Virus record (IMG/VR): IMGVR_UViG_3300035212_003113
Span: 62,001 to 126,000 of that record
DNA: 64,000 bases
Direction: 5' to 3' (one strand)
The notes beneath the pieces are model-generated. The model made no database searches. It worked only from the letters and a program-made list of their open reading frames with translations, and was not told the origin of the DNA. Numbering within the stretch: position 1 is the stretch's first letter; each line of letters opens with the position of its first letter. Positions 2,865 through 39,519 of the stretch are shown piece after piece. A program made the translations under genes and the position numbers.

Positions 2865-3695
2865 ATGAAAAAGATATTAGATAGCCTTGTCGCGGCAGCT
2901 AATGCCGCTGATACTGCTGGCTTGGAAAAGCTAGCAAATGATATTGATGACCTAACGCTTTCCGTTATAGATGAAACTAAAAAATCTCCCGCTGCCAAGT
3001 TAAGCGAAATCCCTAACTGGGAAATGGGCGGAGGCTATAATAATATTATGGCCCTACTGAAAACAGCCAGCCCAGAAGAAATAGATTACTGGCGCAATTG
3101 GTATGCTAATGCTAGACAAGATGTGCAGGCATTGGCGGTTAAATATAACGAGCCTTTTGACCTAGTAGCAGCAACAGTAGCGGTACTAAGCCCTGGAAAC
3201 AATTGGAAATCTAATTTGCGGGCGGCAGAAAACCTATTGCTAGAGGTTCATGACGGCGGAAAGGGCGCGGTCGGCTCCGGCCCTAAGAAAGATAAATCAT
3301 ACGATACTTCTGACATACACAGGCAAATAGCTGAAGAAGAAGCGCCTGTTAATGTCAGATACCGCAATATTGCCGCTTATCCTGCCAATGCAGAGAAGGC
3401 TCGTAACATATTGATCACCGGAAACGTAGCTGATCATTTGACTGGGCCAAAAGTAACTATATTCTACGACAGCTTGGTACATCCCGAGCACGCTCGCGAT
3501 CATATGGTGCTTGATGGCCATGCCATAAACATTTGGCGCGGCGTTCGTGTTCCACTAAAAGGACTAAAGAGTCCTACTGATGCAGAACGAGCGGCAATGA
3601 TATCAGACTATAAGCGCGCTGCCGCAGATACTGGCCTAAGCGTACAGGAAGTTCAAGCAATTACCTGGTTTCTTTGGAAAACGGCGGAAGAATAA
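2865..3695 (+). CDS. Shared N-terminal leader fused to a phage HhH-glycosylase-like (DUF7178-like) domain
   Basis: WY...VAVLSPGNNWKSN...GPKVTIFY...VLDGHA...QAITW pattern; leader shared with 15052 and 38746. Confidence 0.65.
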   Translation: MKKILDSLVAAANAADTAGLEKLANDIDDLTLSVIDETKKSPAAKLSEIPNWEMGGGYNNIMALLKTASPEEIDYWRNWYANARQDVQALAVKYNEPFDLVAATVAVLSPGNNWKSNLRAAENLLLEVHDGGKGAVGSGPKKDKSYDTSDIHRQIAEEEAPVNVRYRNIAAYPANAEKARNILITGNVADHLTGPKVTIFYDSLVHPEHARDHMVLDGHAINIWRGVRVPLKGLKSPTDAERAAMISDYKRAAADTGLSVQEVQAITWFLWKTAEE

Positions 3696-4073
3696 ATGAG
3701 ATTTCTTATACTGGATGACGATGCCTCTCGACACGAGGGCTTTGACTTCCTACTGCCCGGCCACAAAGTAGTTCATGCTTATAGCTATACCGATTTCGTT
3801 GCGGCTGCTAAATCACAAACATTTGATATTATTTGCCTTGATCATGATCTTGGAATAGAAGTAGATGGCGAGCAAATGATTGACAATGGCCAAGCTAGAG
3901 AACTAACTGGACAAGATGCAGCCCGCTGGCTTGTAGACAATCCTCAGCATTTTCCAGATAGCATTCTTGTGCATTCACACAATCCTGTCGGTGCTGCCGC
4001 CATTGCAGATATTCTGCGAGCGGTGCCCGGCAAGCGCGTAGTTGTCAGGCCCTATTCAGCACCTAGGAAGTAA
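3696..4073 (+). CDS. Cyclic-phosphate-processing receiver-domain protein
   Basis: LILDDD..R, ICLDHDLG, TGQDAARWL, VHSHNPVG. Confidence 0.8.
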   Translation: MRFLILDDDASRHEGFDFLLPGHKVVHAYSYTDFVAAAKSQTFDIICLDHDLGIEVDGEQMIDNGQARELTGQDAARWLVDNPQHFPDSILVHSHNPVGAAAIADILRAVPGKRVVVRPYSAPRK

Positions 4074-4074
4074 C

Positions 4075-4260
4075 ATGAATATCCGCGTTATTGCAGAGAA
4101 AGAGTTGCCTGATGGCTCCATGCAGCTCTCTGTCGAGATGGATGATGAAGCCGAGGCAACTATACTTGGGCTGTACAATGAGCAAGTACTGACCGAAGAA
4201 CTTGTGTCCCGATTTGTAATAGAAGCTATCGAGAACCATGTAGAAAAGAAAGGCAAGTAG
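4075..4260 (+). CDS. hypothetical protein
   Basis: Short acidic ORF packed between neighbours. Confidence 0.55.
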   Translation: MNIRVIAEKELPDGSMQLSVEMDDEAEATILGLYNEQVLTEELVSRFVIEAIENHVEKKGK

Positions 4261-4261
4261 C

Positions 4262-5299
4262 ATGAGAAAGCTTGCAAGCATTCAGCGGGTACTTGCGGTT
4301 GAGCCAATTGAAGGCGCAGATAAAATCGAAAAGATCAGCGTGCTAGGCTGGCAGCTAGTTGCAAAGCGTGGCGAGTTCTCTGCGGGCAATCTTTGCACTT
4401 ATTTTGAGCTCGACTCAGTGCCGCCAGATACAGAGCAATATGCTTTTCTCTGGTCTAAGCCGGGAGAGGTTATACCGCGACCGTCTGGTTGGAGGCTGCG
4501 CTCTAAACGCATGCGTGGCGTGCTTAGCCAGGGTCTTGCCCTGCCTATCTCCGTTCTGCCTGCCGGCTGCGAAGCGGTCGAAGGTCAGGACGTAACTGCT
4601 GCGCTAGGTGTAAGCAAGTGGGAGCCGGTTGTCTCTTCTTCTGCTAGAGAGATCGCGGGCGCCTTTCCGAAGCATCTATTTCCAAAGACAGACGAGCTAC
4701 GAGTACAAAGCGCGCCGGAGATCCTAGAAGAGCTGCGCGGAGTAGACTGCTATGCCGCAGTTAAACTAGACGGACAAAGCCTAAGTATTGCAAAGATTGC
4801 TGATGAGTCTGGCTCGCGGCTACTTGTATGCACCCGCAATTATTCTCTGAAAGATTTGCCTGACTCACCTCATTGGGAGGTCGCTCGTCGGCTTAATTTG
4901 ATTGAATTGCTACCAGCCGGCTTTGCGATACAAGGTGAGTTTTGCGGTCCTTCTATTCAGAGCAATCGACTAGCTCTTCGAGACAAGGCTTTTTATGCTT
5001 TCCAGGTATTCGACATCAGCAAGCAGCGCTATTTAGGTTACGATGAATTTGTACAGTTTTGCTCTGCCCGTAGTATCCCTACTGTGCCCGTAGAATGGAG
5101 AGGGGCACTTGACATAGACCTAGCAGGAGTGCTAGCTATGGCTGACGGCACTTATCAAGGCGGCCATCCAAGAGAGGGTCTTGTTATTAGGCCTGTTGCT
5201 GAGAGGATCAGCCCAGCGCTATCTGCTTATTGCGGCTCGCCCGCCCGTGCATCATTCAAGGTAATCAGCAACGCCTATCTACTAAAAATAGGCGAATGA
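4262..5299 (+). CDS. RNA ligase, DRB0094/Rnl2-like with N-terminal OB domain
   Basis: MRKLASIQRV..PIEGADKIE, RGVLSQGL, PKTDELR, KLDG, QGEFCG, REGLV, SFKVISNAYLL. Confidence 0.92.
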   Translation: MRKLASIQRVLAVEPIEGADKIEKISVLGWQLVAKRGEFSAGNLCTYFELDSVPPDTEQYAFLWSKPGEVIPRPSGWRLRSKRMRGVLSQGLALPISVLPAGCEAVEGQDVTAALGVSKWEPVVSSSAREIAGAFPKHLFPKTDELRVQSAPEILEELRGVDCYAAVKLDGQSLSIAKIADESGSRLLVCTRNYSLKDLPDSPHWEVARRLNLIELLPAGFAIQGEFCGPSIQSNRLALRDKAFYAFQVFDISKQRYLGYDEFVQFCSARSIPTVPVEWRGALDIDLAGVLAMADGTYQGGHPREGLVIRPVAERISPALSAYCGSPARASFKVISNAYLLKIGE

Positions 5300-5302
5300 C
5301 TT

Positions 5303-5524
5303 ATGACTGAAGAAACACGCGCGCGCATAAAAGCATCCATAATTGACAAAGGCCTTGAAAAAGTAGTTAGTCGCAAGCTACTGGTATGGGCAGTTGCCAC
5401 GGTAGGCGTTCCACTAGGCTTTCTTAGCGGAGCAGAGTGGATGCAGCTTAGCATGGTATATATAGGCAGCCAGGCTGCCATGGACTTCGCTCTTAATTAT
5501 ACAAAGGCTCGCTCAGGGGGCTGA
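5303..5524 (+). CDS. small membrane protein (holin-like)
   Basis: SRKLLVW followed by two hydrophobic segments; YIGSQA. Confidence 0.5.
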   Translation: MTEETRARIKASIIDKGLEKVVSRKLLVWAVATVGVPLGFLSGAEWMQLSMVYIGSQAAMDFALNYTKARSGG

Positions 5525-5754
5525 TGTACATAACCCGCAGTGAGCAGAACGGTACAGATGAATTCTATACCCTGCGTGACGCACACGTAGCTGCTGACTG
5601 CGACCTCACTATCTGGAAGATAACAAAGCTGCTGATCACTGGCGAGTTGCTTGTTTTTATCCGTCTGCCCAGCGGTGAATGGGAACGAGTACACTGGGAC
5701 GCGGATCGCATTTCTGAAGAAATCAATCTACGACGAGAGGTAATAAAGCCATGA
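5524..5754 (+). CDS. hypothetical protein
   Basis: Overlap-coupled ORF. Confidence 0.55.
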   Translation: MYITRSEQNGTDEFYTLRDAHVAADCDLTIWKITKLLITGELLVFIRLPSGEWERVHWDADRISEEINLRREVIKP

Positions 5755-6323
5755 GTCCTGAGCTTGAGCAACAACTATTCCTAAAGTACAAACGCATATT
5801 CCAGACTCGGTGCGATTACTCTGGCACACCTGTTGCCCCGTCAGTCTACGCAATAGAGTGCAGAGATGGCTGGTATAACCTTATTGATCGGCTACTTTTT
5901 TCAATAAATGAGCACGTCAAGTCTGGCCGCAATCAGCGAGCACGTGACATGCGATATAATCGCGCGCTCAAGGCCGCACAGGCCGGTAACTTTCGATACC
6001 TCTATAACTACTTTCAGTTTGGAGTAAAAAGCTACAAAGTAGAGCCATGGGTTGTCGATAGAGCACACATGGAGCTACAGGCTGGCAAGATACGCGAACC
6101 GGCTCAACTGGTTAAGCAAGTCTATGTCATGCAGATAAAAGAGAAGTTTGGTACCCTGCGCTTTTACTATAACGGCGGAGACGAACAGGTAGCCGGCATG
6201 GTGGCTCTTGCAGAAGCAATGAGCGGCGTCATTTGCGAAGGCTGTGGGGCACCAGGCAGCAAGACCCGTAGCGGCTGGATTAGAGTGCTTTGCGACAACT
6301 GCAAACGCCAACCAAGTGTTTAG
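5751..6323 (+). CDS. conserved phage hypothetical protein with C-terminal Zn ribbon
   Basis: GWYNLI, QIKEKFGTLRFY, CEGCG...LCDNC. Confidence 0.75.
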   Translation: MSPELEQQLFLKYKRIFQTRCDYSGTPVAPSVYAIECRDGWYNLIDRLLFSINEHVKSGRNQRARDMRYNRALKAAQAGNFRYLYNYFQFGVKSYKVEPWVVDRAHMELQAGKIREPAQLVKQVYVMQIKEKFGTLRFYYNGGDEQVAGMVALAEAMSGVICEGCGAPGSKTRSGWIRVLCDNCKRQPSV

Positions 6324-7315
6324 TACCTGTATAGCTTAAATTGCGCTCGGCATGGATTGCCAGCAGCATATATAAAAGCGCGCTCTGTCGGCAAAAACAC
6401 AGTAGAAAATACCGTATGAGATTCGTTATCTCCGTGCCGACAAAGTCCGCCTAGGCCATGCGTACGCATCATTTGCAGTATCTGGGTAACGCCTATTTGC
6501 CCGCCAGCAGTCTTTATTTCTTCTATAGCTCGCTCCAGTCTGGCTCTTGAACCGGCAAGGGAGCTGCCTTCTCGCGCCTCTACTCCCGGTAAGAATATAA
6601 AGTGATTTGAATGAGCAGCTGCGCCCATGGGATGCGTAAGCTTAACAGACTTCCTAGCGCTGGCCTCCAAGCTCACTACTTCACCGGATGCGTCAGCAAT
6701 TATATTATTGAATGAGCTGGCACGATCTTCGTGTAGCAGTATTTTTTCTGCTTCTTCTATAGTCTGCGACCAGCATGCCTCTACGTAAAGAACCATACGC
6801 GGAACGCCGGGGCGAGTATCAGCTGCATCAATTTGATTGCCCGATATAACAATCCCCGCGCTATTTAAACCAATAGAGGGTCCGCCTCGGGTAAATACCA
6901 TGAAAAGACTTGGCAATCCCTTGATGCCAATCTTAAATAGGCGCGAACCTGCTCCCTCGCCTTCGTCGTTTGTATGCCCTATTATAGTTCCTGCGGCAGT
7001 GCGAATAACTATATCTGTACAGCCAGTATCTTTAAGGAGGCGGGCATCTACTGTGTCTGCAAACGTCAACTCCTCATACCACATGCAAAACGCTTCTTGA
7101 AAACTTATACCAGCACCCTCTGCTATGCCTAGTAACAGAGCGCAGGCACGGGGAGCTGCCCGCGTAGCAGAAGCTACTCCCACCTCTACCCACTCCGGAT
7201 ACTCGCGCATAAGTCGACCTATCTCGTGATCCTTGATTGACTGCCTAATCTGATCTCGGAGGGAGCGCCCTATGCTCCTGCCGGCCTTCTGTATGTTTTT
7301 GATCTTTTTGCTCAT
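6320..7315 (-). CDS. Peptidase C45 / acyl-CoA:6-APA acyltransferase-like Ntn hydrolase
   Basis: GCT nucleophile site, GHTND, GLNSAG, HSNHF, SRAR, GNPC; ATG at 7315 has a GGAG SD (ORF is open to 7396). Confidence 0.8.
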   Translation of the reverse strand: MSKKIKNIQKAGRSIGRSLRDQIRQSIKDHEIGRLMREYPEWVEVGVASATRAAPRACALLLGIAEGAGISFQEAFCMWYEELTFADTVDARLLKDTGCTDIVIRTAAGTIIGHTNDEGEGAGSRLFKIGIKGLPSLFMVFTRGGPSIGLNSAGIVISGNQIDAADTRPGVPRMVLYVEACWSQTIEEAEKILLHEDRASSFNNIIADASGEVVSLEASARKSVKLTHPMGAAAHSNHFIFLPGVEAREGSSLAGSRARLERAIEEIKTAGGQIGVTQILQMMRTHGLGGLCRHGDNESHTVFSTVFLPTERAFIYAAGNPCRAQFKLYRY

Positions 7316-7414
7316 GTGCGCAGGAACTCCGGAAAAGCTTACATTGGCATCTGTTTGACTAGCTACTTGCAAATTATTCATTTGCTGATTGCACAAGAAA
7401 TCGTTAATATTGTA

Positions 7415-7452
7415 GGTCGGGGCGGGCCTAAAGCCGGTGTCGCCCGATCCTG
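7415..7452 (+). promoter_or_regulatory. CCTAAA-N13-GATCC hairpin element, copy 2
   Basis: CCTAAA 7427-7432, GATCC 7446-7450; GGC/GCC inner stem; GGTCGGG can pair with CCCGATC. Confidence 0.8.
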
Positions 7453-7482
7453 AAGGGCGTAACCCGAACCGCCGGAGTAGTC

Positions 7483-7881: not shown

Positions 7882-7883
7882 CC

Positions 7884-8620: not shown

Positions 8621-8622
8621 CC

Positions 8623-9761: not shown

Positions 9762-9768
9762 GAAGTTG

Positions 9769-13991: not shown

Positions 13992-14468
13992 ATGGCACTA
14001 ATTGAAAGCGTAGCTGTTACCGAGCCCAAAAATCCCGAGTCGGGGCACTTCCACGTACGCATTTGCCTTGGCATTAGCGAAGACTATGCCAGCCAAGCCT
14101 TGCCCCGCTTAATGAAGTGGCATCAAGCTTCTTGCGTAGATGATCCTAAGAAATACGAAGAAGAGATGACTAGGTCCAAGGTGGAGTTCGTCCCGCTAGC
14201 TAACTCAAATTTTTTCGAAATGAAGTTTATCGGAGAAGCTACTCAGAAGATTAAGACGACCTGGATTAGTGGTCTTGATGCACTGCATATGGATGACAGC
14301 AAGCGTCATTTAATTTTTTCTGAATACATACGGGATACCGTAGTTACCAGGGCGATTGTACAGGAGCTGCATCTCATTTCAACTACACCCCAGAAAAACG
14401 AAAACCTCGACCATCTAGTCGGCTCTGTCGAGCCACTGCTGGTCTGCCTATATATGCACTGGGATTGA
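13992..14468 (+). CDS. hypothetical protein
   Basis: 158-aa ORF. Confidence 0.6.
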   Translation: MALIESVAVTEPKNPESGHFHVRICLGISEDYASQALPRLMKWHQASCVDDPKKYEEEMTRSKVEFVPLANSNFFEMKFIGEATQKIKTTWISGLDALHMDDSKRHLIFSEYIRDTVVTRAIVQELHLISTTPQKNENLDHLVGSVEPLLVCLYMHWD

Positions 14469-14473
14469 ATAAT

Positions 14474-14755
14474 ATGAAACTTGAGATCGTAGATGCAATG
14501 CTAGCATTGCAGGCGCAAGACGCCCCTGCCTTAGCAAGTCGCATATTTTATCATTTCGGAGTACTGCCACTCGAACTAAAAACAGTAATCAGAGGCATAG
14601 TTACGCCTAGAGCGGGTGTGATTGTCGTACCAGACAAGTTCATGTCGTATGCCTTTGGCGAGCTAGTCGGACCAAACAAAAAGCACTGGGGTTTTAGTTG
14701 CTGGTCTTTTAGTGTGACAGACCCGCATGACTATCCATATCTTCTATTTACTTAG
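14474..14755 (+). CDS. MKL-family small protein (group A)
   Basis: MKLEIVDAMLALQAQDAPAL. Confidence 0.65.
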   Translation: MKLEIVDAMLALQAQDAPALASRIFYHFGVLPLELKTVIRGIVTPRAGVIVVPDKFMSYAFGELVGPNKKHWGFSCWSFSVTDPHDYPYLLFT

Positions 14756-14757
14756 AT

Positions 14758-15042
14758 ATGAAAATAGATGCTTTTCTTGCAGAGCAGGCTCTGGCCGAAA
14801 GAAATTGGACAGAAGTCGGGGCTCTTATAATAGGTTACTTTAAACTGGGCGACGTCCCATTTGAAATCAAATGTGAGGTGCCGCGAGGCAAGAGCGCCTG
14901 CAAAGCTGTTCTTGTATTGGTCAAAGAACACCGCAGCTATTCTTTCCTTACGACTGATTTTAGCAACAACAGCCCTACCTTTTTCCCCTGGGACTGGAAT
15001 GAGCCTCTTTCCAGAGATAGCAATTACCTACTAATCGTATAA
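14758..15042 (+). CDS. MKL-family small protein (group A)
   Basis: MKIDAFLAEQALAERNWTEV; tandem with 14474. Confidence 0.65.
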   Translation: MKIDAFLAEQALAERNWTEVGALIIGYFKLGDVPFEIKCEVPRGKSACKAVLVLVKEHRSYSFLTTDFSNNSPTFFPWDWNEPLSRDSNYLLIV

Positions 15043-15051: not shown

Positions 15052-15747
15052 ATGAAACGCATTCTTAAGAAACTGCTAAGCATCGCCTCTGATCTCGACT
15101 CTATTGGCCTGGACAAAGAGGCCGACGCGCTAGACAGCGTAGTAAATCAGCTGGCCGCAGACGACAATGATCTCTTGCCAGGTAATCAAGAGATGGCGCA
15201 GGTTCAGGCGGCTTTTAACAAATACGTTAGTATGGCAGGCGGTACCTTTACGGTAGAAGGCAGATCTTTTGAGGATGCCGTTCCAGTAAATGGCAAAGCG
15301 GGAGATCGCACTACGTGGACCGCCATCCAAGTACAATTTCCTGAATGGTTTGAGGACAGAGATTTTACCAAGCCGGTAGCCTTTAAAAACTACAGGCAGC
15401 TACTAGCCCTGATCGAAAAAGAAATTGCGGCCCTTGATGAAAAAACAGCAGAGGCCCAAACTGCGTTCGAGGCGAAAGCTTCCGAGGTATTGGAAGCTTG
15501 GGACAGCCTTGTTTCAGAACTTTATGATCCAAAAGATCAGGACAAGTATCGCGTAAAAGATATCGCCGATCTACAGTCCAAGCTAAATGCTCTGCCCGCT
15601 CAACGCGGACCTGCCGATGAATTGCATGAAAACGTGGGAGAGCTTGCTGTCAAGCTGAACACTGCTCTTGAGAATAAAGATGTTGACTTACTAGAGCAGA
15701 TAAATGTGACCCTAGGCGGAATGGAACTAGTAACAGAAGAGGATTAA
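15052..15747 (+). CDS. acidic protein with shared N-terminal leader
   Basis: MKRILKKLLSIASDLDSIGLDKEADALD. Confidence 0.75.
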   Translation: MKRILKKLLSIASDLDSIGLDKEADALDSVVNQLAADDNDLLPGNQEMAQVQAAFNKYVSMAGGTFTVEGRSFEDAVPVNGKAGDRTTWTAIQVQFPEWFEDRDFTKPVAFKNYRQLLALIEKEIAALDEKTAEAQTAFEAKASEVLEAWDSLVSELYDPKDQDKYRVKDIADLQSKLNALPAQRGPADELHENVGELAVKLNTALENKDVDLLEQINVTLGGMELVTEED

Positions 15748-15748: not shown

Positions 15749-15776
15749 GAAGGCGCTACGGCGCCTTCGCCATTTT
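15749..15776 (+). terminator. hairpin/possible terminator
   Basis: GAAGGCGC-TACG-GCGCCTTC followed by a displaced T run. Confidence 0.55.
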
Positions 15777-16085
15777 ATGAACGAACCCGCTACTTCTGCG
15801 ACTGCACTAGCAACTGTTGAAAAAAAGCAAAATGCGCTACAGCGATGGCAAAAGCGTAATCGAATGCGACGTGATAGCAGTATGGCTTCGGATTTTATTC
15901 ACTGGGCGCACAGTTATTCACTGGGCATAGACAAAGAAGTTGCGATGCGGGCTGCCATTAGAGCAGGACCAGACGATTACCTGGCTGCCTTTGCGGGCCT
16001 GCTGATTTTCCCATTTTTTGGATTACCGCTTAATATCATCAAGCTTATTAAAAAAATGCATTCCAGGCTTTACTACGGAGAGTAA
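15777..16085 (+). CDS. hypothetical membrane protein
   Basis: C-terminal hydrophobic segment. Confidence 0.55.
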   Translation: MNEPATSATALATVEKKQNALQRWQKRNRMRRDSSMASDFIHWAHSYSLGIDKEVAMRAAIRAGPDDYLAAFAGLLIFPFFGLPLNIIKLIKKMHSRLYYGE

Positions 16086-16103
16086 TTAAATCGTAAATAC
16101 TTG

Positions 16104-16535
16104 GTGAAACTCCAGGTAGCTGAGCTTTTATTTTGTGAAGACTTTTACCAAGTTTTGCTTTGGTTTGCAAAGTTTTACGAAATGAAGGTTCCGTCACCGG
16201 AGCATTTCTCAGAGATAATGTCTAATCCCGATATAATGACGATAGGCATATGGCTAGATTCTTGTGGTACGCTTGCTACTTTGAAATGGGATCGCCATAA
16301 TTACATAGCAGACTTTTTTCAGAAATGCGTAGAGCTGCCGCCTAGTGCCGAAAGTGCGGGTGAAATATTCGCCGCACTTGCAAAATATAAATACGGAATG
16401 CCACCTAGAATCACTCTTTGGACGACTACAACTATAACTACAAGCCTAGAGCTGAGCCTTGATCTCGCGCGCTTCCTAGAAGATCGCGGATTTTGCAGAG
16501 ACTTCTCAAACAACTGGGACTACTTTGGATCATGA
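16104..16535 (+). CDS. MKL-family protein, tandem paralog of 16532
   Basis: IMSNPDI, GIWLD, PRITLW, NWDY shared. Confidence 0.7.
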   Translation: MKLQVAELLFCEDFYQVLLWFAKFYEMKVPSPEHFSEIMSNPDIMTIGIWLDSCGTLATLKWDRHNYIADFFQKCVELPPSAESAGEIFAALAKYKYGMPPRITLWTTTTITTSLELSLDLARFLEDRGFCRDFSNNWDYFGS

Positions 16536-16954
16536 AGCTAAATGACCTAAGCGCGGCAATCGAGCTAAAGAATTGCCAAACAGGCCTAGACCTATGCGTT
16601 AAATGTGCAAATCTTTTTGGAATGCCGATGCCATCAAAAGAATGCATCAGCTGGATAATGTCTAATCCAGACATCCAAGAAGCAGGAATATGGATAGACT
16701 TGCCAGGAGACTCGTTTTGCCTTTATTTCAAGTATGAGCATTCAGCAGAGCCTCTTAACAAAACTCTGTCATTTTATACAAAGTTTGCTGGCCTTTGTCG
16801 CAAGGGTCGACCACACATTACCTTGTGGTCTAGTAAAGATGCAAACACTACATATCTAGATGATCGTGATTTTACAAGAGTAGATCGCACAAACTGGGAT
16901 TATGACGGCAGGGCAATTAATCATGCTCAAGCCTGTCATGGGCATAACAAATAA
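16532..16954 (+). CDS. MKL-family protein, tandem paralog of 16104
   Basis: IMSNPDI, GIWID, PHITLW, NWDY shared. Confidence 0.7.
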   Translation: MKLNDLSAAIELKNCQTGLDLCVKCANLFGMPMPSKECISWIMSNPDIQEAGIWIDLPGDSFCLYFKYEHSAEPLNKTLSFYTKFAGLCRKGRPHITLWSSKDANTTYLDDRDFTRVDRTNWDYDGRAINHAQACHGHNK

Positions 16955-31178: not shown

Positions 31179-31420
31179 GGAGCTTATCTTGGAAGACTAC
31201 TGCATCGAGGTCTGGTTGCGCGGCAAGAAAGCCGTCAGCTACATTGGCCATCCAGAAGACATTCTTTCCAGCACAGATCCAGATCTTGTAGACTGGTATA
31301 CGCAAACAGCTGCAACACGCAAGTGGTCGATGTTCTGCGAAACATTTGATTCTCGCAAATGCAGCTCTGGTACCATGTCGCATCTCTCTGGCACAATTCG
31401 TATTTCACATAGGAAGCAAA

Positions 31421-32743
31421 ATGACAACGTTTGATCTTCGCAGCGACGAAACAACTCACCGCGTCCATGTAAAGGTGGACGCTGCTGATGTGAAGACGGC
31501 CATGGAAGAGGCTGCGCGGGGGTTGCAGGCAGTAATGGCCTTGCCTCCTCATCCGAAGGGTTCTGTCCCTATTGAGATTATTCTGAATAAGTTCTCTAGC
31601 CAGTTCCGCTCTGGCGTCACTGAGAAGCTTGTTCGCAAGGCAACTGGCGAAGCAGTATATTCGCTCGGTCTTCGTAGCGGCGCAGATCCGCAGCTAGACG
31701 AGCAGTATCGCATCTCTCCTGCAAAGCGTTGGCTCGGTGCATTTGCTGATGACGGCGGACTGGAGTTCTCGGTTAGTTGGCCAAGGCCACCTGCCGTAGA
31801 AATCCGTGATTATATTGGTATCTCTGTAGAGGTAGCACAGGGCGACAGGGAAGCTGCCATTGAAGGCCAGCTGCAAATCCTGCGTCTACAGACTAGCAGC
31901 AACAAGCTGGTAGAGCGTCCAGCAACAGCCGAAGATGTGCTTGTAGTTGACCTTGAAGGTACTGATGGCGAAGGTAATCTTCTGCACGGCGCACGGTTCA
32001 CAGACTTTGTTTTCCGCCCTAAGATGCGTGGCGGGCGAGGGTTCAGTGACAAGCTAGATCAGCTTGCCGTTGGTCGGTCGGCAGGAGAGAGCTTCTCGTT
32101 TGAAGAGAACTACCCTGACAACCACCATGACAAATATCTGCGCGGACAAAAAGTAACTTTTGCCTGTACCGTGCGGGAGGTTCGGGAATCAGTTGTGCCC
32201 GAGATCAATGACGAGTTTGCAAAGACAGCAGGATACGCTGATCTTGCAGAACTACGTGAAGCGGTGGGCAGGGAGTGGGATGCTGGCAATGAAGTAAACA
32301 TTGCCACTGCCAAGCGCAAGCAAGTTCGTAAAAAGATTGTAGAGGCGAATCCGCTGCCGGTAGACGAGGCAGTGCTCGCAGACTATTGTGGTGCTGCGGC
32401 AGAGCAATTTGGAGTAAAGTTCGAGGATTTACTTAAGGCTCCCGAGACAGCGGAGATTGCTGAGTCTATCCGTGCTGATCAGCGCGAAGTAATTATCTAC
32501 AATGAAATCCTTGATCGTGTATTTGACAGCCACGCACAGCAGCTGTTGCTGAAGGAAGCTGACATCTTGAAGTACGCCGCGGCCGAGGCACAGCACGGAG
32601 TAACAGCAGAAGAAGAGATTGCCGCAAAGCGTTCAAAGCCTGCTGCCTATTCCTCCTGGCTCCAGCGTTCTCAACGCCAGAAAGTAGCCGACTGGATTGT
32701 AGATCAGGCGGTTGTAACAAAGGTTCCTGGCAAGGAGGATTGA
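31421..32743 (+). CDS. tig: trigger factor (divergent)
   Basis: N-domain, FKBP domain (DVLVVDLEG, YPDNHH..LRGQKVTF), PEINDEFAK, C-domain. Confidence 0.88.
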   Translation: MTTFDLRSDETTHRVHVKVDAADVKTAMEEAARGLQAVMALPPHPKGSVPIEIILNKFSSQFRSGVTEKLVRKATGEAVYSLGLRSGADPQLDEQYRISPAKRWLGAFADDGGLEFSVSWPRPPAVEIRDYIGISVEVAQGDREAAIEGQLQILRLQTSSNKLVERPATAEDVLVVDLEGTDGEGNLLHGARFTDFVFRPKMRGGRGFSDKLDQLAVGRSAGESFSFEENYPDNHHDKYLRGQKVTFACTVREVRESVVPEINDEFAKTAGYADLAELREAVGREWDAGNEVNIATAKRKQVRKKIVEANPLPVDEAVLADYCGAAAEQFGVKFEDLLKAPETAEIAESIRADQREVIIYNEILDRVFDSHAQQLLLKEADILKYAAAEAQHGVTAEEEIAAKRSKPAAYSSWLQRSQRQKVADWIVDQAVVTKVPGKED

Positions 32744-33719: not shown

Positions 33720-33720
33720 C

Positions 33721-34206: not shown

Positions 34207-34208
34207 CA

Positions 34209-34246
34209 GGCCACCCCGGCCCTAAAGCCGGGGTCCGCCGATCCTG
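34209..34246 (+). promoter_or_regulatory. CCTAAA-N13-GATCC hairpin element, copy 9
   Basis: Perfect ACCCCGGC-CCTAAA-GCCGGGGT; GATCC 34240-34244. Confidence 0.85.
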
Positions 34247-34273
34247 AGCGGCGACGCCCACAACGGAGTAAAG

Positions 34274-35548
34274 ATGCTAACTGAAAAACTTCTAGATGAC
34301 TGGATTCGTACATCGCAGAATGTACTCCTTGTCGGCCCGCATGGCATTGGCAAGACCGAGCAAGTACTGGCTGCTATGAAGCGCAACGGCATTAAGTATG
34401 CCTACTTCTCTGCCTCTACCATGGACCCGTTCGTTGACTTCGTTGGTGTGCCACGGGTAGTCGAAGATAAGACCGGCCGCTGGCTAGACTTTGTACGTCC
34501 AAAGATTTTTGCAAACAATGATGTGCAAGTGATCATCGTTGACGAGTTCAATCGTGCTCCCAAGAAGGTGCGCAATGCACTAATGGAAGCAATCCAGTTT
34601 AAGTCGATCAATGGCGTGCCGATGCCCAATCTAAAGATGATCTGGGCCATGGTCAATCCTCATGATGACGAGGATACCTACGACGTTGATCGCCTGGACC
34701 CAGCTCAGGAAGACCGCTTTCAAATCAAGGTTGTCCTGCCTAATGGCCCATCTCTCAAGTACTTCCGCGATAACTACGGAGTGCTTGGCGAGATAGCGCA
34801 CCGTTGGTGGAATAAGATTGATGAGAAGATGCGTAAGAGCAGCATTGTTTCTCCCCGGCGCCTAGAATACGCGCTACAGGCGTATCAAGCGGGCCTTGAT
34901 ATTGATTACGTTCTGCCCAAAGAAGTTAACGTAAAGGATCTTAAGACCGAGCTCAATAAGTCAGGACTTATGTCGCGGCTGCCTGCTCTCAAGAAGTTGG
35001 GCGTAGAGGATCTGCGCAAGGAGATTCAGGGCAACGGCAATCTGCGTGACCTGGTCATGCAGGAGATCCTTGAGACTAAGTTCCCGGTAGAGTTGGTCGC
35101 TGCCATGAGTGACGAGGAAATCGTCAACAAGTGCAGCAAGCCTGGTGTTCGCACGTTTATTTGCGAACGGATCAGCGAAGGCGATCCACGCTTCACTTCT
35201 ATGGCAGAGGGCGTAGCAAAGACGCCTCCTAGCAAGGCCGCTGACAAAGAGCTGGCCGAGGCCATTAAGGCTTTTGCCACTGCGCTTGAAAAGGCCAAGC
35301 TAGCGCGCCAGCGCAAGATTACGGCAGAAGCCCGCAAGCAGAATGCAGGCGCCGAAGCGCTTAAGCGCCAGCTAGGAGTTCTTTTCCAGCCTACCATTAC
35401 TCGGGAAGAGATTGTTGCTCTGCTTGAGCCCCATAAGAAAGACATCTCTGCTGACCCGGTAATGAAGGATCTGATCCTGCGCGCTACGCAGGTGGCCGTC
35501 AATCGCGAACTAATTAGCGAGGTCGCACGGTCGCTCTCGCTTATCTGA
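34274..35548 (+). CDS. MoxR/dynein-related AAA+ ATPase
   Basis: GPHGIGKT, IIVDEFNRA, NP, LDPAQEDRF, SPRR. Confidence 0.9.
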   Translation: MLTEKLLDDWIRTSQNVLLVGPHGIGKTEQVLAAMKRNGIKYAYFSASTMDPFVDFVGVPRVVEDKTGRWLDFVRPKIFANNDVQVIIVDEFNRAPKKVRNALMEAIQFKSINGVPMPNLKMIWAMVNPHDDEDTYDVDRLDPAQEDRFQIKVVLPNGPSLKYFRDNYGVLGEIAHRWWNKIDEKMRKSSIVSPRRLEYALQAYQAGLDIDYVLPKEVNVKDLKTELNKSGLMSRLPALKKLGVEDLRKEIQGNGNLRDLVMQEILETKFPVELVAAMSDEEIVNKCSKPGVRTFICERISEGDPRFTSMAEGVAKTPPSKAADKELAEAIKAFATALEKAKLARQRKITAEARKQNAGAEALKRQLGVLFQPTITREEIVALLEPHKKDISADPVMKDLILRATQVAVNRELISEVARSLSLI

Positions 35549-35561
35549 CAGGAGCTTGCCC

Positions 35562-36857
35562 ATGGAAGAAGTATTTTCGGATGACGAGTGGAACTCGCTG
35601 GCCAAGAGGCTAGAGGATTTTCACTCGGTTTTTTCAAAGTTCTGGTCCATGGGCAAGCCGACTGTTACTCGCGACATCCCTACTTGCGCGGTAGCATTTG
35701 ACAAGGCCGGGCAGCAGATCATGTGGTCTGTTAATCCTGACTTCTGGGAAACGCTTTCAGACGATGGCAAGCTGTTTGCAATTGCGCACGAGTGTATGCA
35801 TGTTGTTTTTAGCCATGGCGTGCGCAGTACCGAAATGCTTAAGAACATAGATCCTCAGATCATTAACGTTGCGATGGATATCGCAGTCAACTCTCATCTT
35901 GAGAGTCACTATGGTTTCGAGCGCGCGGCAGTAGAGCCGCCCGGCGTGCGCTATATTTGGTTAGACGAGGTACTGCCCGGAGAACAAGCTGGACGAGCTT
36001 TTGAGTACTATGTAGAGGCTCTGCTAAAAGACAATCCGCAGTGCCAGTCAAAGAGTGGCGACGGAGATCCTACGACTGTTGATGATCACGGCGGACTAGG
36101 CGACTTTACGGGCGGCGATCTAGCTGATATGCTAAAGCGCACGCTTGACTCTGGTACTACAGAAGACCTAGCAGATATGGCCCAAGATGACGCCAGCGAT
36201 GATATGAAGAAGAAAGCCGCTGCTGTTAGCAAAGGCATTAAGCCCGGCAACAATCCTGGCAATACTGTGCTCGAGATTACTTCTGCTAAATATCTGCGTC
36301 GCAAGCCAAAGTGGGAGACTGTTGTCAAGAAATGGTCGATGCGAGCACTAGAGGAATATGCAGAAGTTCCTAGCTGGACGCAGCCTTCGCGCAGGCTTGA
36401 TCCCAATATGATGGGTGACTGTATCTTGCCTTCTCCCGGCGAGCAGGAAGGCGACGGAAAGAACAGGATTCGTGTATCGTTTTTTCTGGATACAAGCGGT
36501 AGCTGTATTAGCTATGCCACCAGGTTTTTTCGTGCAGCTGGTACCCTGGATCCACGCAAGTTTGACATCAAGCTATACTGCTTCGATACCAGAGTTTATG
36601 ACACAGATCTAAAGAGCGCCAAAGTCTATGGTGGCGGTGGTACTGCTTTCTCTATTATCGAGAGACGGATTCAAAAAGAAATGGCTGACAAGAGCACTTG
36701 CTATCCCGATGCAGTCTGGGTACTGAGTGATGGTTATGGCGATACTGTTCGACCAGAAAAGCCAAAGCGCTGGCACTGGTTCCTGACAGAGGGCGGCTCA
36801 CGCGACTACGGCATCCATCCCGAGTCCAATGTCCATCATCTTAAGAATTTTGAGTGA
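35562..36857 (+). CDS. DUF2201-like metallopeptidase + VWA protein
   Basis: HECMH, NVAMDIAVN, DTSGS, GGGGTAF, SDGY. Confidence 0.88.
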   Translation: MEEVFSDDEWNSLAKRLEDFHSVFSKFWSMGKPTVTRDIPTCAVAFDKAGQQIMWSVNPDFWETLSDDGKLFAIAHECMHVVFSHGVRSTEMLKNIDPQIINVAMDIAVNSHLESHYGFERAAVEPPGVRYIWLDEVLPGEQAGRAFEYYVEALLKDNPQCQSKSGDGDPTTVDDHGGLGDFTGGDLADMLKRTLDSGTTEDLADMAQDDASDDMKKKAAAVSKGIKPGNNPGNTVLEITSAKYLRRKPKWETVVKKWSMRALEEYAEVPSWTQPSRRLDPNMMGDCILPSPGEQEGDGKNRIRVSFFLDTSGSCISYATRFFRAAGTLDPRKFDIKLYCFDTRVYDTDLKSAKVYGGGGTAFSIIERRIQKEMADKSTCYPDAVWVLSDGYGDTVRPEKPKRWHWFLTEGGSRDYGIHPESNVHHLKNFE

Positions 36858-36860
36858 AGT

Positions 36861-37607
36861 ATGACCTGGAATTCAGACGCAGAAGGCGCAGGGGCACGGA
36901 CATTTCGAAACAGCTTTGTTGCCAGGTTTGATGGCAAAGGCTTCTCTCGTCTTGTTCGGTCTCCTGAATTTGTTGCCCCTTTTGACAATAGCATCTGTCA
37001 AAGCATGCACGCAGCAACCGACTGCATAATCAAGCATCTTACTCCTGACTTTGTGTATCAAGTTTCGGACGAGATAAGTGCTTTTTTTATAGCACGTCCA
37101 GAGGCCGGATCTCAGCTGCCGTTTGGCGGCAAAGAATCCAAGGTATGCAGTATTGGTGCTTCGGCGGCAGGCACCGCATTTTCTCTCGCGCTAGGCAAAT
37201 CCGCGCTGTTTGATGGGCGAGCATTCGACTGCACAGCAGATCAAATGCCTGATTATCTTGCTTCCCGGCTGAAGTCTGGCTTCAAGAATAGTGTTAGTCA
37301 GCTAGCCGGCGAGCACTTTTCTGCCAAGTCTCTGCATTGCAGGAACAGCGCGGAAAAGCTACAGATGCTTGCAGACGCGGGAATAGATTACAATGGCATG
37401 CCCGAAGACTTTAAATATGGGCGAATTTGGTATAAGGAAAAGCAGCAGGTCTGGAGCGATGTTGCAGGCGAGCATATTCAGCGCAGTCGCTGGACCAGTA
37501 CCGCGCTATACTCGCAGCTGAGTCAAGCGGCCTTCTCCGAGTTAAAGCGAACTATATCTGAATTGGATGGGCGGGCCGGGCCTAAAGTCGACCCCGCCCG
37601 ATCCTGA
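36861..37607 (+). CDS. tRNA(His) guanylyltransferase Thg1-like
   Basis: RFDGKGFS, PFD, YQVSDEIS, FGGK..K, FDGR. Confidence 0.9.
   Translation: MTWNSDAEGAGARTFRNSFVARFDGKGFSRLVRSPEFVAPFDNSICQSMHAATDCIIKHLTPDFVYQVSDEISAFFIARPEAGSQLPFGGKESKVCSIGASAAGTAFSLALGKSALFDGRAFDCTADQMPDYLASRLKSGFKNSVSQLAGEHFSAKSLHCRNSAEKLQMLADAGIDYNGMPEDFKYGRIWYKEKQQVWSDVAGEHIQRSRWTSTALYSQLSQAAFSELKRTISELDGRAGPKVDPARS
37569..37606 (+). promoter_or_regulatory. CCTAAA-N13-GATCC hairpin element, copy 10 (overlaps Thg1 3' end)
   Basis: CCTAAA 37581-37586, GATCC 37600-37604; GGGCGGG/CCCGCCC arms. Confidence 0.8.
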
Positions 37608-37691
37608 ACTACGGGCGGCGCGGCCAGCCACCGGGGTTGCACAGTAATTCTGCTTGTGCAGCCAGCAGAGGCCTTGTTTAATAGGAATAAA

Positions 37692-37865
37692 ATGAAGACA
37701 TCTTATCTTCGTGGTATGCAGTTTCATGAGCTTAAGCGTCTGGAGAAGGAGCTCTTTGCGGAGCTGCGCAATGCTGATCCAGGCCATCTGTCCGCTATCC
37801 AGCGGGATATTGCATGGGCGCAGAAGGCTCTGCAAGAGAAGCTTGAAGACGTAAAGCGTACCTGA
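37692..37865 (+). CDS. small helical protein
   Basis: AGGA SD; 57 aa. Confidence 0.55.
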   Translation: MKTSYLRGMQFHELKRLEKELFAELRNADPGHLSAIQRDIAWAQKALQEKLEDVKRT

Positions 37866-37883
37866 GACAAGGGGGCTTGTTGC

Positions 37884-38441
37884 ATGTCAAATACCGGACA
37901 CCCAGCTTGGCAGCTAGCATATCTAGTTGGCAACAAGCCCCCTGCTTTTGGAATTGCATTAGAAGCAGGCATATACTCGGTAACTTATGGAGAACCAGAA
38001 TGCCTGCTCTTTTGCAAAAATCTAGGCGATGATCGCCTTATCCTCAAAGCTCTGCGGGATGCTGCCGACAAAAATGGTCCTGTGCTGTTTTGCACCGACT
38101 TTCTTATAACAGATCGCGGCAGCTATCCAGAGTATTTTCTGCCATCGCTGGCTGTATCAGGCTGGCGGCCAGGCAGAGTACGTGATGAAATTATAGAGAA
38201 TATGGCACGTATGTGGCCCGGCAGGCGCCTGTATACGTATCGCACACCCGATCACGAACAGATATATGTAGATGTGATCGCAGACTACTCGCGCGACAGA
38301 GCCGACTGGGTTAGAGTTATTGATGCCCTAGAATATGGCGGCATGGCACATTCACCCTGGCTAAAATATGTGCGGACTAGTCATCGCTCGTTGATAGACT
38401 GGACTCGCAACCCCAAGCTTAAAGATTGGATAACCCTTTGA
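37884..38441 (+). CDS. hypothetical protein
   Basis: 185-aa ORF. Confidence 0.6.
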   Translation: MSNTGHPAWQLAYLVGNKPPAFGIALEAGIYSVTYGEPECLLFCKNLGDDRLILKALRDAADKNGPVLFCTDFLITDRGSYPEYFLPSLAVSGWRPGRVRDEIIENMARMWPGRRLYTYRTPDHEQIYVDVIADYSRDRADWVRVIDALEYGGMAHSPWLKYVRTSHRSLIDWTRNPKLKDWITL

Positions 38442-38745
38442 GATCTCGCTTTACAAGAGTTAATACAACGCTTTGGGTTGCCATTATAAAGAGTTTTGCA
38501 CCAAAGAGGGATATACCTCCGGTGGTGTTTCTGGGTAAAAAGAAGAAGAATAGGTTGAAGAATAATGAGCAGCCTGCTGAAAAAGCTACGCAAGTTTTGT
38601 GAAAAACTAAATAAAAATGACGAAGTTCCGCGGTCTTACGAGATAGTCAGGGTAAGTACGAATATCCCTAGCACAAGAATGTTTGTCCTAGTCGCTACTA
38701 ATAAGCCTAAAATTTGAGGCAATATTTACTATCTCAGAGGTAAAA

Positions 38746-39519
38746 ATGAAGGAAATCCTTAATAAGCTTGCTGCATTGGCAGACGAAGCAGACACCGCCG
38801 GCCACGCCGAAGTAGCCAATCAGATTGACGGAATAATCAAGACTTTTGCAGCAGATGGCGGAGACCCTGAAGCCGTTGCTCCAATGATCAAAGATTTTGA
38901 AGCGCCACCCGTCTTTGTGCCTAACAGAGGCATAATGTTCATCAGAAAGTACGAAGAGTACAAGAAACTATCTGATGAGGATAAGAAGAAGTTCTTGGCA
39001 GCAAATCCCGACTTCGTTAAAGACAAAGGCCATCTTGTTCCTCCAACTTCTAAAGAAGTAGATGACGCCTTTAAATCAGTTGTCAAAACGAAGGTTTATC
39101 AGGATGCGAACAAGGCTCCATCAGTAAAAGATCAGCACGAGAAAGCTCGTCAGCAGATGGAGCAGATTGCAAAGCTCTATACTGATATAGGTCGGCCAGC
39201 TCCATTTACTGTCCCGGCTTCTGGCCAGGCAACTGGTCAGCAGATTCTGGACTTCTTAAATAAGGCCGGTAAAGGCGGGCCGCTTGCAAGCTGGAGTGAT
39301 ATGTTTGCGCGCCTAAATGAAATCAAGGGCGATGCGCATCTATTCGCCCTTGATATGAAGAAGGATCCATTTGGCAAGGATTCTACCACTATGGTTGCCG
39401 ATAATGAGTTTAAGTCGCTGCCGCCTGACTATTTCAAAGCGAAAGCCCCTGGAGAAATGGATTTCTTGCCAGGAGAGGTAGAGGGCAAAGGGCCGCCAAA
39501 GCCCCCGCGCGGAATGTGA
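38746..39519 (+). CDS. protein with shared N-terminal leader
   Basis: MKEILNKLAALADEADTAGHAEVANQID; GAGG SD. Confidence 0.75.
   Translation: MKEILNKLAALADEADTAGHAEVANQIDGIIKTFAADGGDPEAVAPMIKDFEAPPVFVPNRGIMFIRKYEEYKKLSDEDKKKFLAANPDFVKDKGHLVPPTSKEVDDAFKSVVKTKVYQDANKAPSVKDQHEKARQQMEQIAKLYTDIGRPAPFTVPASGQATGQQILDFLNKAGKGGPLASWSDMFARLNEIKGDAHLFALDMKKDPFGKDSTTMVADNEFKSLPPDYFKAKAPGEMDFLPGEVEGKGPPKPPRGM

What the first reader, a model, noticed from the sequence alone, without database searches (positions are those of the whole stretch)
2865..39519. Portable ~28-aa N-terminal leader on three unrelated proteins
Seen: 2865 MKKILDSLVAAANAADTAGLEKLANDID; 15052 MKRILKKLLSIASDLDSIGLDKEADALD; 38746 MKEILNKLAALADEADTAGHAEVANQID. 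The consensus is MKxILxxLxxxAxxxDxxGxxxxAxx(I/L)D with no gaps, while the downstream domains are unrelated. Two of the genes are followed by their own hairpin/terminator and preceded by CTACTAAT (about 15028 and 38695). Known analogy: the T4 capsid-targeting sequence and cleaved propeptides of jumbo-phage head proteins. Inference: a virion-packaging tag. Its fusion to a DNA-glycosylase-like domain would mean the enzyme is co-injected with the genome.
Basis: partly seen in the sequence, partly recalled or inferred. Interest (0 to 1): 0.78.

Follow-up and report, generated by a model that had tools for sequence, protein, structure and literature searches.

The report
Shared helical tag on phage proteins
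Three unrelated proteins of a 372-kb lake-water phage begin with the same ~35-residue two-helix module, which proves to be a widespread, virus-specific and so far undescribed domain that probably docks diverse proteins onto a common partner, though loading into the virion is not shown.

Summary
ORFs at 2865, 15052 and 38746 start with the same gap-free motif, and their downstream parts are unrelated. It is not a private leader. A profile of it finds 220 proteins (E<=1e-3) among 1.84 billion representatives. A position-agnostic DNA pattern finds it on about 100 IMG/VR contigs, against 2 true hits in 120 pattern matches from cellular genomes. Core: LxxLA[DN]xLDxxGxxxEA[DN]x[ILV]DxxI, predicted helix-turn-helix. 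About 58% of copies sit at the exact N-terminus; the rest are internal or C-terminal, and some are tandem (predicted four-helix bundle). Pfam, PHROGs, NCBIfam and PDB have no model for it. Genomes carry many copies (at least 6 here) on unrelated proteins. Copies within a genome resemble each other more than copies between genomes, without recent DNA copying, which points to a shared partner. The virion-packaging reading stays plausible: some copies flank portal or prohead-protease genes, some are fused to cell-wall hydrolases, and one is fused to DUF7178, a polyvalent-protein domain. It is unproven: no conserved cleavage site follows the module, and long contigs show no enrichment near head genes. 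DUF7178 does have an Ogg2-like DNA-glycosylase fold. CTACTAAT is chance.

The parts
2865..2969 (+). Module copy 1 (residues 1-35 of the 276-aa protein): MKKILDSLVAAANAADTAGLEKLANDIDDLTLSVI
   Evidence: AF2 model: helices 2-17 and 21-34, pLDDT 74-89
2865..3695 (+). Gene 1: module + linker (residues 35-57) + DUF7178
   Evidence: Pfam DUF7178, E 4e-29, residues 59-273. Close homologues with the same module: P0152, P0153, P0026
3039..3683 (+). DUF7178 domain, HhH-GPD (Ogg2/AGOG-like) DNA-glycosylase fold; invariant G194-P195-K196 and L216-D217-x-H219
15052..15156 (+). Module copy 2 (residues 1-35 of the 231-aa protein)
15052..15747 (+). Gene 2: module + acidic protein with no known family (only itself in the 5.8-billion-protein search by its leader)
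15749..15778 (+). Intrinsic-terminator-like hairpin plus T-run after gene 2
38746..38850 (+). Module copy 3 (residues 1-35 of the 257-aa protein)
38746..39519 (+). Gene 3: module + conserved family of unknown function (orthologues L003 at 75% identity, L007/P0002, P0004, P0005, P0020 all keep the module)
39521..39552 (.). Bidirectional terminator-like hairpin (A-run / 12-bp stem / T-run) between gene 3 and the convergent ORF 39547-40239
15028..15035 (+). CTACTAAT upstream of gene 2: judged a chance match, not a part of the system
38695..38702 (+). CTACTAAT upstream of gene 3: judged a chance match

Best explanation
The leader is an autonomous helix-turn-helix docking module of about 32 residues: L8-x-x-[LI]-A12-[DN]-x-L-D16-x-x-G19-x-x-x-E-A24-[DN]-x-[ILV]-D28-x-x-[IL]. 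It is joined by a variable, mostly acidic linker to many unrelated proteins of large uncultivated tailed phages. Two hairpins can pack into a four-helix bundle: in cis in tandem proteins, and by inference in trans between single copies or with a hub protein. Within one genome all copies are kept alike by selection at the protein level. They therefore most likely recognise one shared, genome-specific partner. My preferred reading of the partner is the assembling head (scaffold, core, portal region). The tagged proteins would then be loaded into the capsid and delivered with the DNA, as an unlinked version of a polyvalent protein. They include the glycosylase-like DUF7178 protein and, in other phages, peptidoglycan hydrolases, a lipase and a 2H phosphoesterase. 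Shown: the module exists, it is virus-specific, it favours the N-terminus, it is multi-copy, it has a predicted fold, and copies within a genome are more alike. Inferred: that it docks. More weakly inferred: that the destination is the capsid.
For: The profile finds 220 proteins at E<=1e-3. Among the best 150 there are 264 copies, and 113 proteins have a copy at the N-terminus. The position-agnostic pattern in IMG/VR gives 69 N-terminal, 41 internal and 8 C-terminal copies out of 118. In those loci, 184 ORFs carry the module, often in runs of adjacent genes: L101 has 7, L120 has 6, L100 and L068 have 5 each. At least 6 copies lie in this genome (window plus L077). The module is virus-specific: 180 copies scoring >=20 bits in the viral loci against 3 in the 120 pattern hits from cellular genomes. 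Fold: two helices in the protein 1 model, and four helices at pLDDT 87, pTM 0.69 for a tandem copy. Within-genome identity at variable positions is 0.41 against 0.22 between genomes (0 of 2000 permutations reach this), although the downstream parts are unrelated. Codon identity at identical residues is only 0.45 against 0.40, so this is not recent DNA copying. Head link: module genes flank a large protein with a prohead-protease match in 7 loci, and follow the portal gene in a conserved arrangement. Cargo repertoire: LysM, Hydrolase_2, GH108 + PG_binding_1, GDSL lipase, tRNA-ligase CPD, ferritin, and DUF7178. DUF7178 also occurs fused to ART-PolyVal, and occurs three times in the 2039-aa Rctr197k_173 together with InPase and LigT. 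These are the domains of polyvalent proteins, which are proposed to be packaged and injected (PMC5512222).
Against: There is no direct evidence of virion location. The adjacency to head genes comes mostly from short IMG/VR contigs, which enter that collection because they carry hallmark genes. Among contigs >=50 kb, only about 5 of roughly 70 loci have a head gene within 2.5 kb. A rough estimate of 10-17% by chance makes that no enrichment (my estimate). The three window genes and P0013 lie among replication and RNA-repair genes. There is no conserved cleavage site after the module. In P0155-P0164 the module lies between DUF5661 and DUF7178, so it acts as an internal connector there. Most tagged proteins have no recognisable domain, so the cargo repertoire rests on about 10 of 95 proteins. 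Four-helix-bundle models of short helical peptides are easy for AlphaFold2 to produce.
Confidence: 0.4

Rival explanations
1. It is a generic self-association module. The hairpin simply dimerises or bundles (homo- or hetero-oligomers) to raise avidity or to build multi-enzyme complexes. It has no sorting role and no link to the virion.
For: Tandem copies are predicted to form a four-helix bundle. Many proteins carry 2-3 copies at any position. The module is internal in the DUF5661-module-DUF7178 proteins. The genes are dispersed among non-structural genes. Within-genome similarity would also follow if the copies pair with one another.
Against: A plain oligomerisation domain does not explain the extreme preference for the very first residues (58% against under 5% expected). 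It also does not explain the invariant polar residues D16, G19 and D28 across hundreds of unrelated proteins, or the restriction to viruses.
Confidence: 0.27
2. It is an address tag for a different phage-built destination in the infected cell, not the capsid interior. Candidates are the tail or baseplate, a replication compartment or condensate, or a phage-encoded chaperone or protease hub. This phage encodes a trigger-factor-like protein and a MoxR/DUF2201 pair.
For: It shares the evidence for a common partner. The window encodes a Trigger_N protein (31346-32743), a MoxR-type AAA protein (34274-35548) and a DUF2201 metallopeptidase-like protein (35556-36857). One tagged protein has a left-handed beta-helix of the kind seen in fibres, and single PHROG matches are to tail-fibre and tape-measure families.
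Against: No co-occurrence of the module with any such hub was tested or seen. The peptidoglycan hydrolase, lipase and polyvalent-domain cargo fits delivery at entry better.
Confidence: 0.2
3. It is a cleaved capsid-targeting propeptide homologous or equivalent to the T4 CTS or the phiKZ-type head propeptides.
For: It is N-terminal on many unrelated proteins, and some genes lie next to prohead-protease genes.
Against: The module is three times longer and folded. It also occurs internally, at the C-terminus and in tandem. Column information falls to background after position 35, and [LI]xE and [SAG]xE are not enriched in the following 36 residues (14.7 vs 14.9 and 18.1 vs 19.9 per 1000). tblastn with three motif-bearing queries (window gene 3 residues 1-42, P0016, L120 module) found no significant match in 50,697 GenBank phage records, which include T4 and phiKZ relatives.
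Confidence: 0.08
4. It is a chance resemblance or a low-complexity amphipathic helix with no common origin.
For: The region is short, helical and rich in alanine and acidic residues.
Against: Scores are 66-74 bits against 6 bits for the next ORF in the window. The pattern is expected 0 times and found 3 times. There are 220 database hits at E<=1e-3 with the same invariant D, G and D.
Confidence: 0.01

Closest known systems
T4 capsid-targeting sequence (CTS) of internal proteins IPI-III and Alt
   Same: A short N-terminal element shared by otherwise unrelated proteins of one phage. It would explain how enzymes are co-injected with the DNA.
   Different: The CTS is about 10 residues and is removed by the gp21 protease at an L/IxE site (established knowledge). 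This module is a folded hairpin of about 32 residues with no conserved cleavage site. It is also found internally, at the C-terminus and in tandem. There is no sequence relation.
Helix-loop-helix elements of scaffolding proteins (P22 gp8 C-terminal coat-binding domain; phi29 gp7 N-terminal four-helix-bundle dimer)
   Same: A small helix-turn-helix that bundles and/or binds the procapsid. P22 scaffold fusions are used to load foreign cargo into capsids (established knowledge). Some module genes sit in the scaffold position between the portal and the protease or capsid genes.
   Different: The P22 element is basic and C-terminal, whereas this module is acidic and mostly N-terminal. The profile search of PDB sequences found nothing at E<=10 beyond noise. 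Here the module is on many proteins per genome, not on one scaffold.
Encapsulin cargo-loading peptides and microcompartment encapsulation peptides
   Same: Terminal, linker-tethered short helical tags that send diverse enzymes into a protein shell. Encapsulin shells share the HK97 fold with phage capsids. One module protein carries a ferritin domain, a classic encapsulin cargo type.
   Different: Those tags are single helices or extended peptides with other consensus sequences. They are usually C-terminal in encapsulins, and they belong to cellular systems. This module is virus-specific.
Polyvalent proteins of phages and conjugative elements (Iyer et al. 2017, PMC5512222)
   Same: The same effector repertoire: DUF7178 fused to ART-PolyVal, or to InPase and LigT; lysozyme-type hydrolases; 2H phosphoesterase.
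   Different: Polyvalent proteins link their effectors covalently in one giant polypeptide, which is often anchored by MuF or portal domains. Here each effector is a separate small gene with its own copy of the module.
HhH-GPD DNA glycosylases, Ogg2/AGOG branch (for the DUF7178 part only)
   Same: The fold match covers the whole domain: SsOgg Z 9.9, MjOgg 9.8, TM1821 9.2, AGOG 7.0, MagIII 6.8, hOGG1 6.7. All 50 best rows are glycosylases of this superfamily. Lys196 in a G-P-K hairpin and Asp217, 21 residues later, are invariant. That resembles the Lys/Asp pair of bifunctional glycosylase/lyases.
   Different: There is no sequence-level match to any solved glycosylase or to Pfam HhH-GPD. Identity is 9-14%. 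The Z scores lie in the range where helical folds can match by arrangement alone. The activity and substrate are unknown.

Membership tests
T4-type capsid-targeting sequence / cleaved head propeptide | Short (about 10 aa) strictly N-terminal peptide | tested here: not met
   The module spans about 32 residues as two helices. 41 of 118 copies are internal and 8 are C-terminal.
T4-type capsid-targeting sequence / cleaved head propeptide | Conserved prohead-protease cleavage site at its end ([LI]xE in T4, [SAG]xE in phiKZ-like phages) | tested here: not met
   No conserved column after position 35, and no enrichment of either site in the next 36 residues.
T4-type capsid-targeting sequence / cleaved head propeptide | Tagged proteins are present in the mature head | not testable with these tools
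   No proteomic data. No RNA run was listed either.
Scaffolding-protein helix-loop-helix (P22 gp8 / phi29 gp7) | Helix-loop-helix able to bundle | tested here: met
   AF2: H2-17/H21-34 in protein 1. A four-helix model for a tandem copy, pLDDT 87. This is a prediction only.
Scaffolding-protein helix-loop-helix (P22 gp8 / phi29 gp7) | Sequence or profile similarity to solved scaffold domains | tested here: not met
   The profile of 80 copies against all PDB sequences gave a best E of 1.1, to unrelated proteins. The BFVD and ESM Atlas fold searches were uninformative.
Scaffolding-protein helix-loop-helix (P22 gp8 / phi29 gp7) | Encoded in the head module next to the capsid or protease genes | tested here: inconclusive
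   True for some subfamilies: 7 loci next to the protease-containing protein, and a conserved gene after the portal. Most copies, including the three in the window, lie elsewhere, and long contigs show no clear enrichment.
Known curated protein families (Pfam-A, PHROGs v4, NCBIfam 20) | A model that covers the module | tested here: not met
   No family matches the module region in the three window proteins or in multi-copy proteins at permissive thresholds.
HhH-GPD DNA glycosylase superfamily (DUF7178 part) | Two-lobed helical fold with a helix-hairpin-helix | tested here: met
   VIA-align Z 9.2-9.9 to Ogg2 enzymes over residues 53-274; all top 50 rows belong to this superfamily. Foldseek gives probability 0.93 but E 0.2.
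HhH-GPD DNA glycosylase superfamily (DUF7178 part) | Catalytic Asp about 20 residues after the hairpin (plus Lys in bifunctional enzymes) | tested here: inconclusive
   K196 and D217 are invariant in 63 homologues. Their structural equivalence to the catalytic pair was not checked residue by residue.
Polyvalent-protein domain (DUF7178 part) | Occurs inside giant multi-effector proteins of phages together with hallmark domains | tested here: met
   Rctr197k_173: InPase + DUF5661 + 3 x DUF7178 + LigT. P0225: ART-PolyVal + DUF7178.

The most novel reading that the evidence does not exclude
Large phages use a genome-specific protein address code. One folded hairpin tag, placed at the start of many separate genes, loads a whole set of unlinked effectors into the capsid for co-injection. 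These include a DNA-glycosylase-like enzyme, cell-wall hydrolases, a lipase and phosphoesterases. This would be a distributed counterpart of polyvalent proteins, and a sorting signal that has not been described.
Probability: 0.3. Interest if true: 0.85.

Novelty: new variant of a known kind. Interest (0 to 1): 0.64.

Why it matters
How huge phages decide which of their hundreds of proteins go into the particle, or to any other destination, is largely unknown outside T4 and a few model phages. This module can be recognised by sequence, is virus-specific, and marks half a dozen or more proteins per genome. It gives a direct handle on that question. It defines a candidate set of co-delivered or co-localised proteins in uncultivated phages, and it predicts a single partner that can be sought. 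If the tag loads capsids, it would also offer a natural way to load cargo into phage particles. It also assigns a likely fold (Ogg2-like DNA glycosylase) and context (polyvalent-protein effector) to Pfam DUF7178.

Tried and rejected
1. Word-indexed homologue search with the leader of gene 2 found only itself. The approach is too insensitive for a 40-residue region.
2. The search for related loci with the leader alignment confirmed only close relatives of gene 3.
3. tblastn of motif peptides against 50,697 GenBank phage records gave nothing significant. The module appears absent from, or too diverged in, cultured phages.
4. The profile against PDB sequences, the BFVD fold search and the ESM Atlas fold search of the tandem model gave no informative match.
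5. A literature search for motif strings found nothing relevant.
6. CTACTAAT as a promoter was rejected on statistics.
7. Neighbourhood enrichment: 30 of the 68 largest neighbours are portal, terminase or protease genes. I reject this as evidence of general head association, because most come from short hallmark-selected contigs.
8. The conserved unknown neighbour family A11 was tested as a divergent portal by profile-profile comparison and is not one (probability 0.3%). The Atlas search was uninformative.
9. Membrane targeting was rejected. Hydrophobic segments occur in 4% of tagged proteins against 12% of neighbours. Two L077 proteins of this genome do carry Gly/Ala-rich hydrophobic stretches.
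10. The cleavage-site search was negative.
11. No RNA-seq run was listed for expression data.
12. The full 372-kb genome could not be scanned. Only the window plus a 10.4-kb locus (L077) were available.

Full report
**Observation**

The three ORFs are real: 2865-3695 (276 aa), 15052-15747 (231 aa) and 38746-39519 (257 aa), all on the + strand. Their first 28 residues align without gaps, with ten invariant positions. BLASTP finds nothing in common after residue about 30.

A leader HMM searched against every stop-to-stop ORF in all six frames scores these three at 66-74 bits and nothing else above 6 bits. A degenerate DNA pattern for the core hits only these three sites, against zero expected.

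Two of the genes are followed by strong hairpin-plus-T-run terminators. The gene at 2865 has none; the next ORF starts at 3696, directly after it.

The octamer CTACTAAT is present at 15028 and 38695, but it is not meaningful. It is not enriched in the window. It sits at different distances from the two start codons. In this window, 16% of random triples of upstream regions share some exact octamer.

**Source of the window**

The window is part of IMGVR_UViG_3300035212_003113, a 371,675-bp viral contig, at about positions 62001-126000. The same DNA is held by several lake-water metagenomes from different years.

The window encodes two RNA ligases, a trigger-factor-like protein, a MoxR-type ATPase with a DUF2201 partner, a type II topoisomerase and an FtsK-like ATPase. 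No structural genes were recognised among the ten largest ORFs tested. No cultured phage is similar at the DNA level.

**What the leader is**

A five-sequence profile of the leader, searched without a word index against 1.84 billion cluster representatives, found 220 proteins at E<=1e-3. Among the best 150 there are 264 copies:
- 113 at the very N-terminus, 124 internal and 27 C-terminal;
- 103 of the 150 proteins carry two or three copies.

That ranking favours multi-copy proteins. I therefore also scanned IMG/VR with a DNA pattern that has no start-codon requirement. Of 118 classifiable distinct copies, 69 (58%) are at the exact N-terminus, 41 are internal and 8 are C-terminal.

N-terminal, internal and C-terminal copies share one consensus:
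- L8-[IVA]-x-[LI]-A12-[DN]-x-L15-D16-x-x-G19-x-x-[KE]-E-A24-[DN]-x-[ILV]-D28-x-[ILF]-[IL]-K-K-x-A35;
- D16, G19 and D28 are invariant in the 80-copy alignment.

Conservation ends at position 35. What follows is a variable stretch, mostly acidic.

AlphaFold2 predicts two helices (2-17 and 21-34) in protein 1. For a tandem copy it predicts a compact four-helix unit (pLDDT 87, pTM 0.69).

No model in Pfam-A, PHROGs or NCBIfam covers the module. No PDB sequence matches its profile. A literal search of the literature for motif strings found nothing.

The module is essentially virus-specific. The same DNA pattern in 596 Gb of bacterial and archaeal genomes also hit its 120-stretch limit. Only 2 of those loci hold true copies (3 copies scoring >=20 bits), and one of them is an 8.4-kb contig of a MAG. 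The viral loci hold 180 such copies.

**Distribution within genomes**

In the viral loci, 184 ORFs carry the module. Many loci hold runs of adjacent genes that each start with it: L101 has 7, L120 has 6, L100 and L068 have 5 each, and L104 has 4. Single contigs carry copies at several distant places.

The phage studied here has at least six. Three are in the window. Three more lie in L077, at contig positions 14730-25091, outside the window.

Module copies from the same genome are much more alike at the variable positions than copies from different genomes (0.41 against 0.22; 0 of 2000 label permutations reach this). Yet the proteins they are attached to are unrelated. Codon identity at identical residues is barely above the between-genome baseline (0.45 against 0.40, and 0.32 in this genome). 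The likeness is therefore maintained at the protein level rather than by recent copying. This is what one expects if all copies in a genome must fit one partner, or fit each other.

**What the module is attached to**

Most partner proteins have no known family. Among 95 module-first proteins, Pfam finds the following:
- LysM (2), SleB-type Hydrolase_2 (2), GH108 with PG_binding_1;
- a GDSL lipase, a tRNA-ligase CPD (2H) domain, PilZ, DUF6582;
- a left-handed beta-helix.

One 673-aa protein has a ferritin domain. Hydrophobic segments are not enriched.

Protein 1 of the window carries DUF7178. With a 63-sequence alignment, AlphaFold2 gives a confident model (pLDDT 85). Its domain (residues about 58-274) matches HhH-GPD DNA glycosylases and nothing else among the best 50 rows: SsOgg Z 9.9, MjOgg 9.8, TM1821 9.2, AGOG 7.0, MagIII 6.8, hOGG1 6.7. 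Foldseek alone is weak.

G194-P195-K196 and L216-D217-x-H219 are invariant in the family. This resembles the hairpin lysine and downstream aspartate of bifunctional glycosylase/lyases. That is my reading, and I did not check it residue by residue.

DUF7178 is a polyvalent-protein domain. It occurs three times in the 2039-aa Rctr197k_173, together with InPase, DUF5661 and a LigT-type domain. It is also fused to ART-PolyVal in P0225. Such proteins are proposed to be packaged and injected (PMC5512222).

In one subfamily (P0155-P0164) the module lies between DUF5661 and DUF7178, so there it is internal.

**Genomic context**

Of the 68 largest ORFs within 2.5 kb of a module gene, PHROGs identify 13 as portal, 10 as large terminase, and 7 as a large protein with a head-maturation-protease match.

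Three arrangements recur:
- portal, then a 166-aa module protein, then a protein of about 600-700 aa with DUF192;
- runs of module genes flanking the protease-containing protein;
- an unknown 520-575-aa family (A11), followed by a two-module protein and then a one-module protein.

Some module proteins are therefore encoded in head modules. I do not take this as general enrichment. Most of these loci come from short contigs, which enter IMG/VR because they carry hallmark genes. Among contigs of 50 kb or more, only about 5 of roughly 70 loci have a head gene that close, which is near my rough chance estimate. The A11 family is not a recognisable portal.

**Mechanism**

The best-supported statement is that this is an autonomous helical-hairpin docking module. 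It is tethered by a flexible linker, and all copies within a genome recognise a common partner.

The destination is inferred. I favour the assembling head, so that tagged proteins are packaged and co-delivered as an unlinked counterpart of polyvalent proteins. The reasons are the cargo types, the DUF7178 link and the head-module subfamilies. My confidence is only about 0.4.

Rival readings:
- a plain oligomerisation module (0.27);
- an address tag for another phage structure or hub (0.2);
- the literal T4-CTS/propeptide model (0.08). This is disfavoured by the module's size, its internal and tandem copies, and the lack of any conserved or enriched cleavage motif.

**Verdict**

The module family appears undescribed, but functionally it is a new variant of a known kind: terminal targeting or docking tags.

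Noticed in passing
window 1450-2586 and 4262-5299: Two different RNA ligases flank gene 1: one is T4 Rnl1-like (PF09511), the other is RNA_ligase with a PHA02142 OB domain. In other phages, tRNA nucleotidyltransferase/RNA-ligase giant proteins also sit next to module gene clusters (L015, L101, L109, L112).
   Followed up: partly
window 3696-4073: A 125-aa ORF starts directly after the end of gene 1 (ORF listing end 3695, start 3696). By eye it looks like a CheY-type receiver (MRFLILDDD...). It was not tested with a family search.
   Followed up: no
window 31346-32743, 34274-35548, 35556-36857: The phage encodes a trigger-factor N-domain protein, a MoxR-type AAA ATPase and a DUF2201 metallopeptidase-like partner. 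This is a possible chaperone or processing hub.
   Followed up: no
window 39547-40239 (-); L077 889-1425 and 1394-2047 (-): Cys-rich ORFs are convergent with or near module genes. The L077 pair ends in HNH-like motifs by eye, so they may be homing endonucleases. The window ORF shares the bidirectional terminator with gene 3.
   Followed up: no
window 14465-15042 and 16101-16954: Pairs of small adjacent ORFs around gene 2 look like local paralogues by eye (shared endings such as ...HITLW...NWDY.G).
   Followed up: no
P0006, P0009, P0017, P0018 (C-terminal ~90 residues); L009 2126-3175: A conserved Cys/His-rich C-terminal domain (...RYCPDHxGV...YQCPxDGxxYNWETGW...GGSVAxQTP...) follows two module copies. 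It has no Pfam or PHROG match. The gene always follows the unknown A11 family protein.
   Followed up: partly
L036 4211-5773 and 8 relatives (alignment A11): A conserved 520-575-aa protein family of unknown function lies immediately upstream of module genes in 9 loci. It is not a recognisable portal (hhalign probability 0.3%).
   Followed up: partly
L101 10093-13764, L104 2-2620, L027 1222-4599 and 4 relatives: Proteins of about 650 to 1,220 aa (L104 runs off its locus), whose residues ~110-220 match a head-maturation-protease PHROG (phrog_18299, and phrog_2774), are flanked by module gene clusters. Pfam finds nothing in the two tested (L101, L027).
   Followed up: partly
L077 4774-5505 (+) and 5551-6579 (-): Two further module proteins of this same genome carry long Gly/Ala-rich hydrophobic stretches (glycine-zipper-like). 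This is unlike most module proteins.
   Followed up: partly
L252 2-2023 (P0054): A 673-aa module protein has a ferritin domain. Ferritin-like proteins are classic cargo of encapsulin shells.
   Followed up: no
P0155-P0164; L001 15885-22004: DUF5661 repeatedly precedes DUF7178, in small proteins and in the giant Rctr197k_173. In the small proteins the module sits between the two domains.
   Followed up: partly
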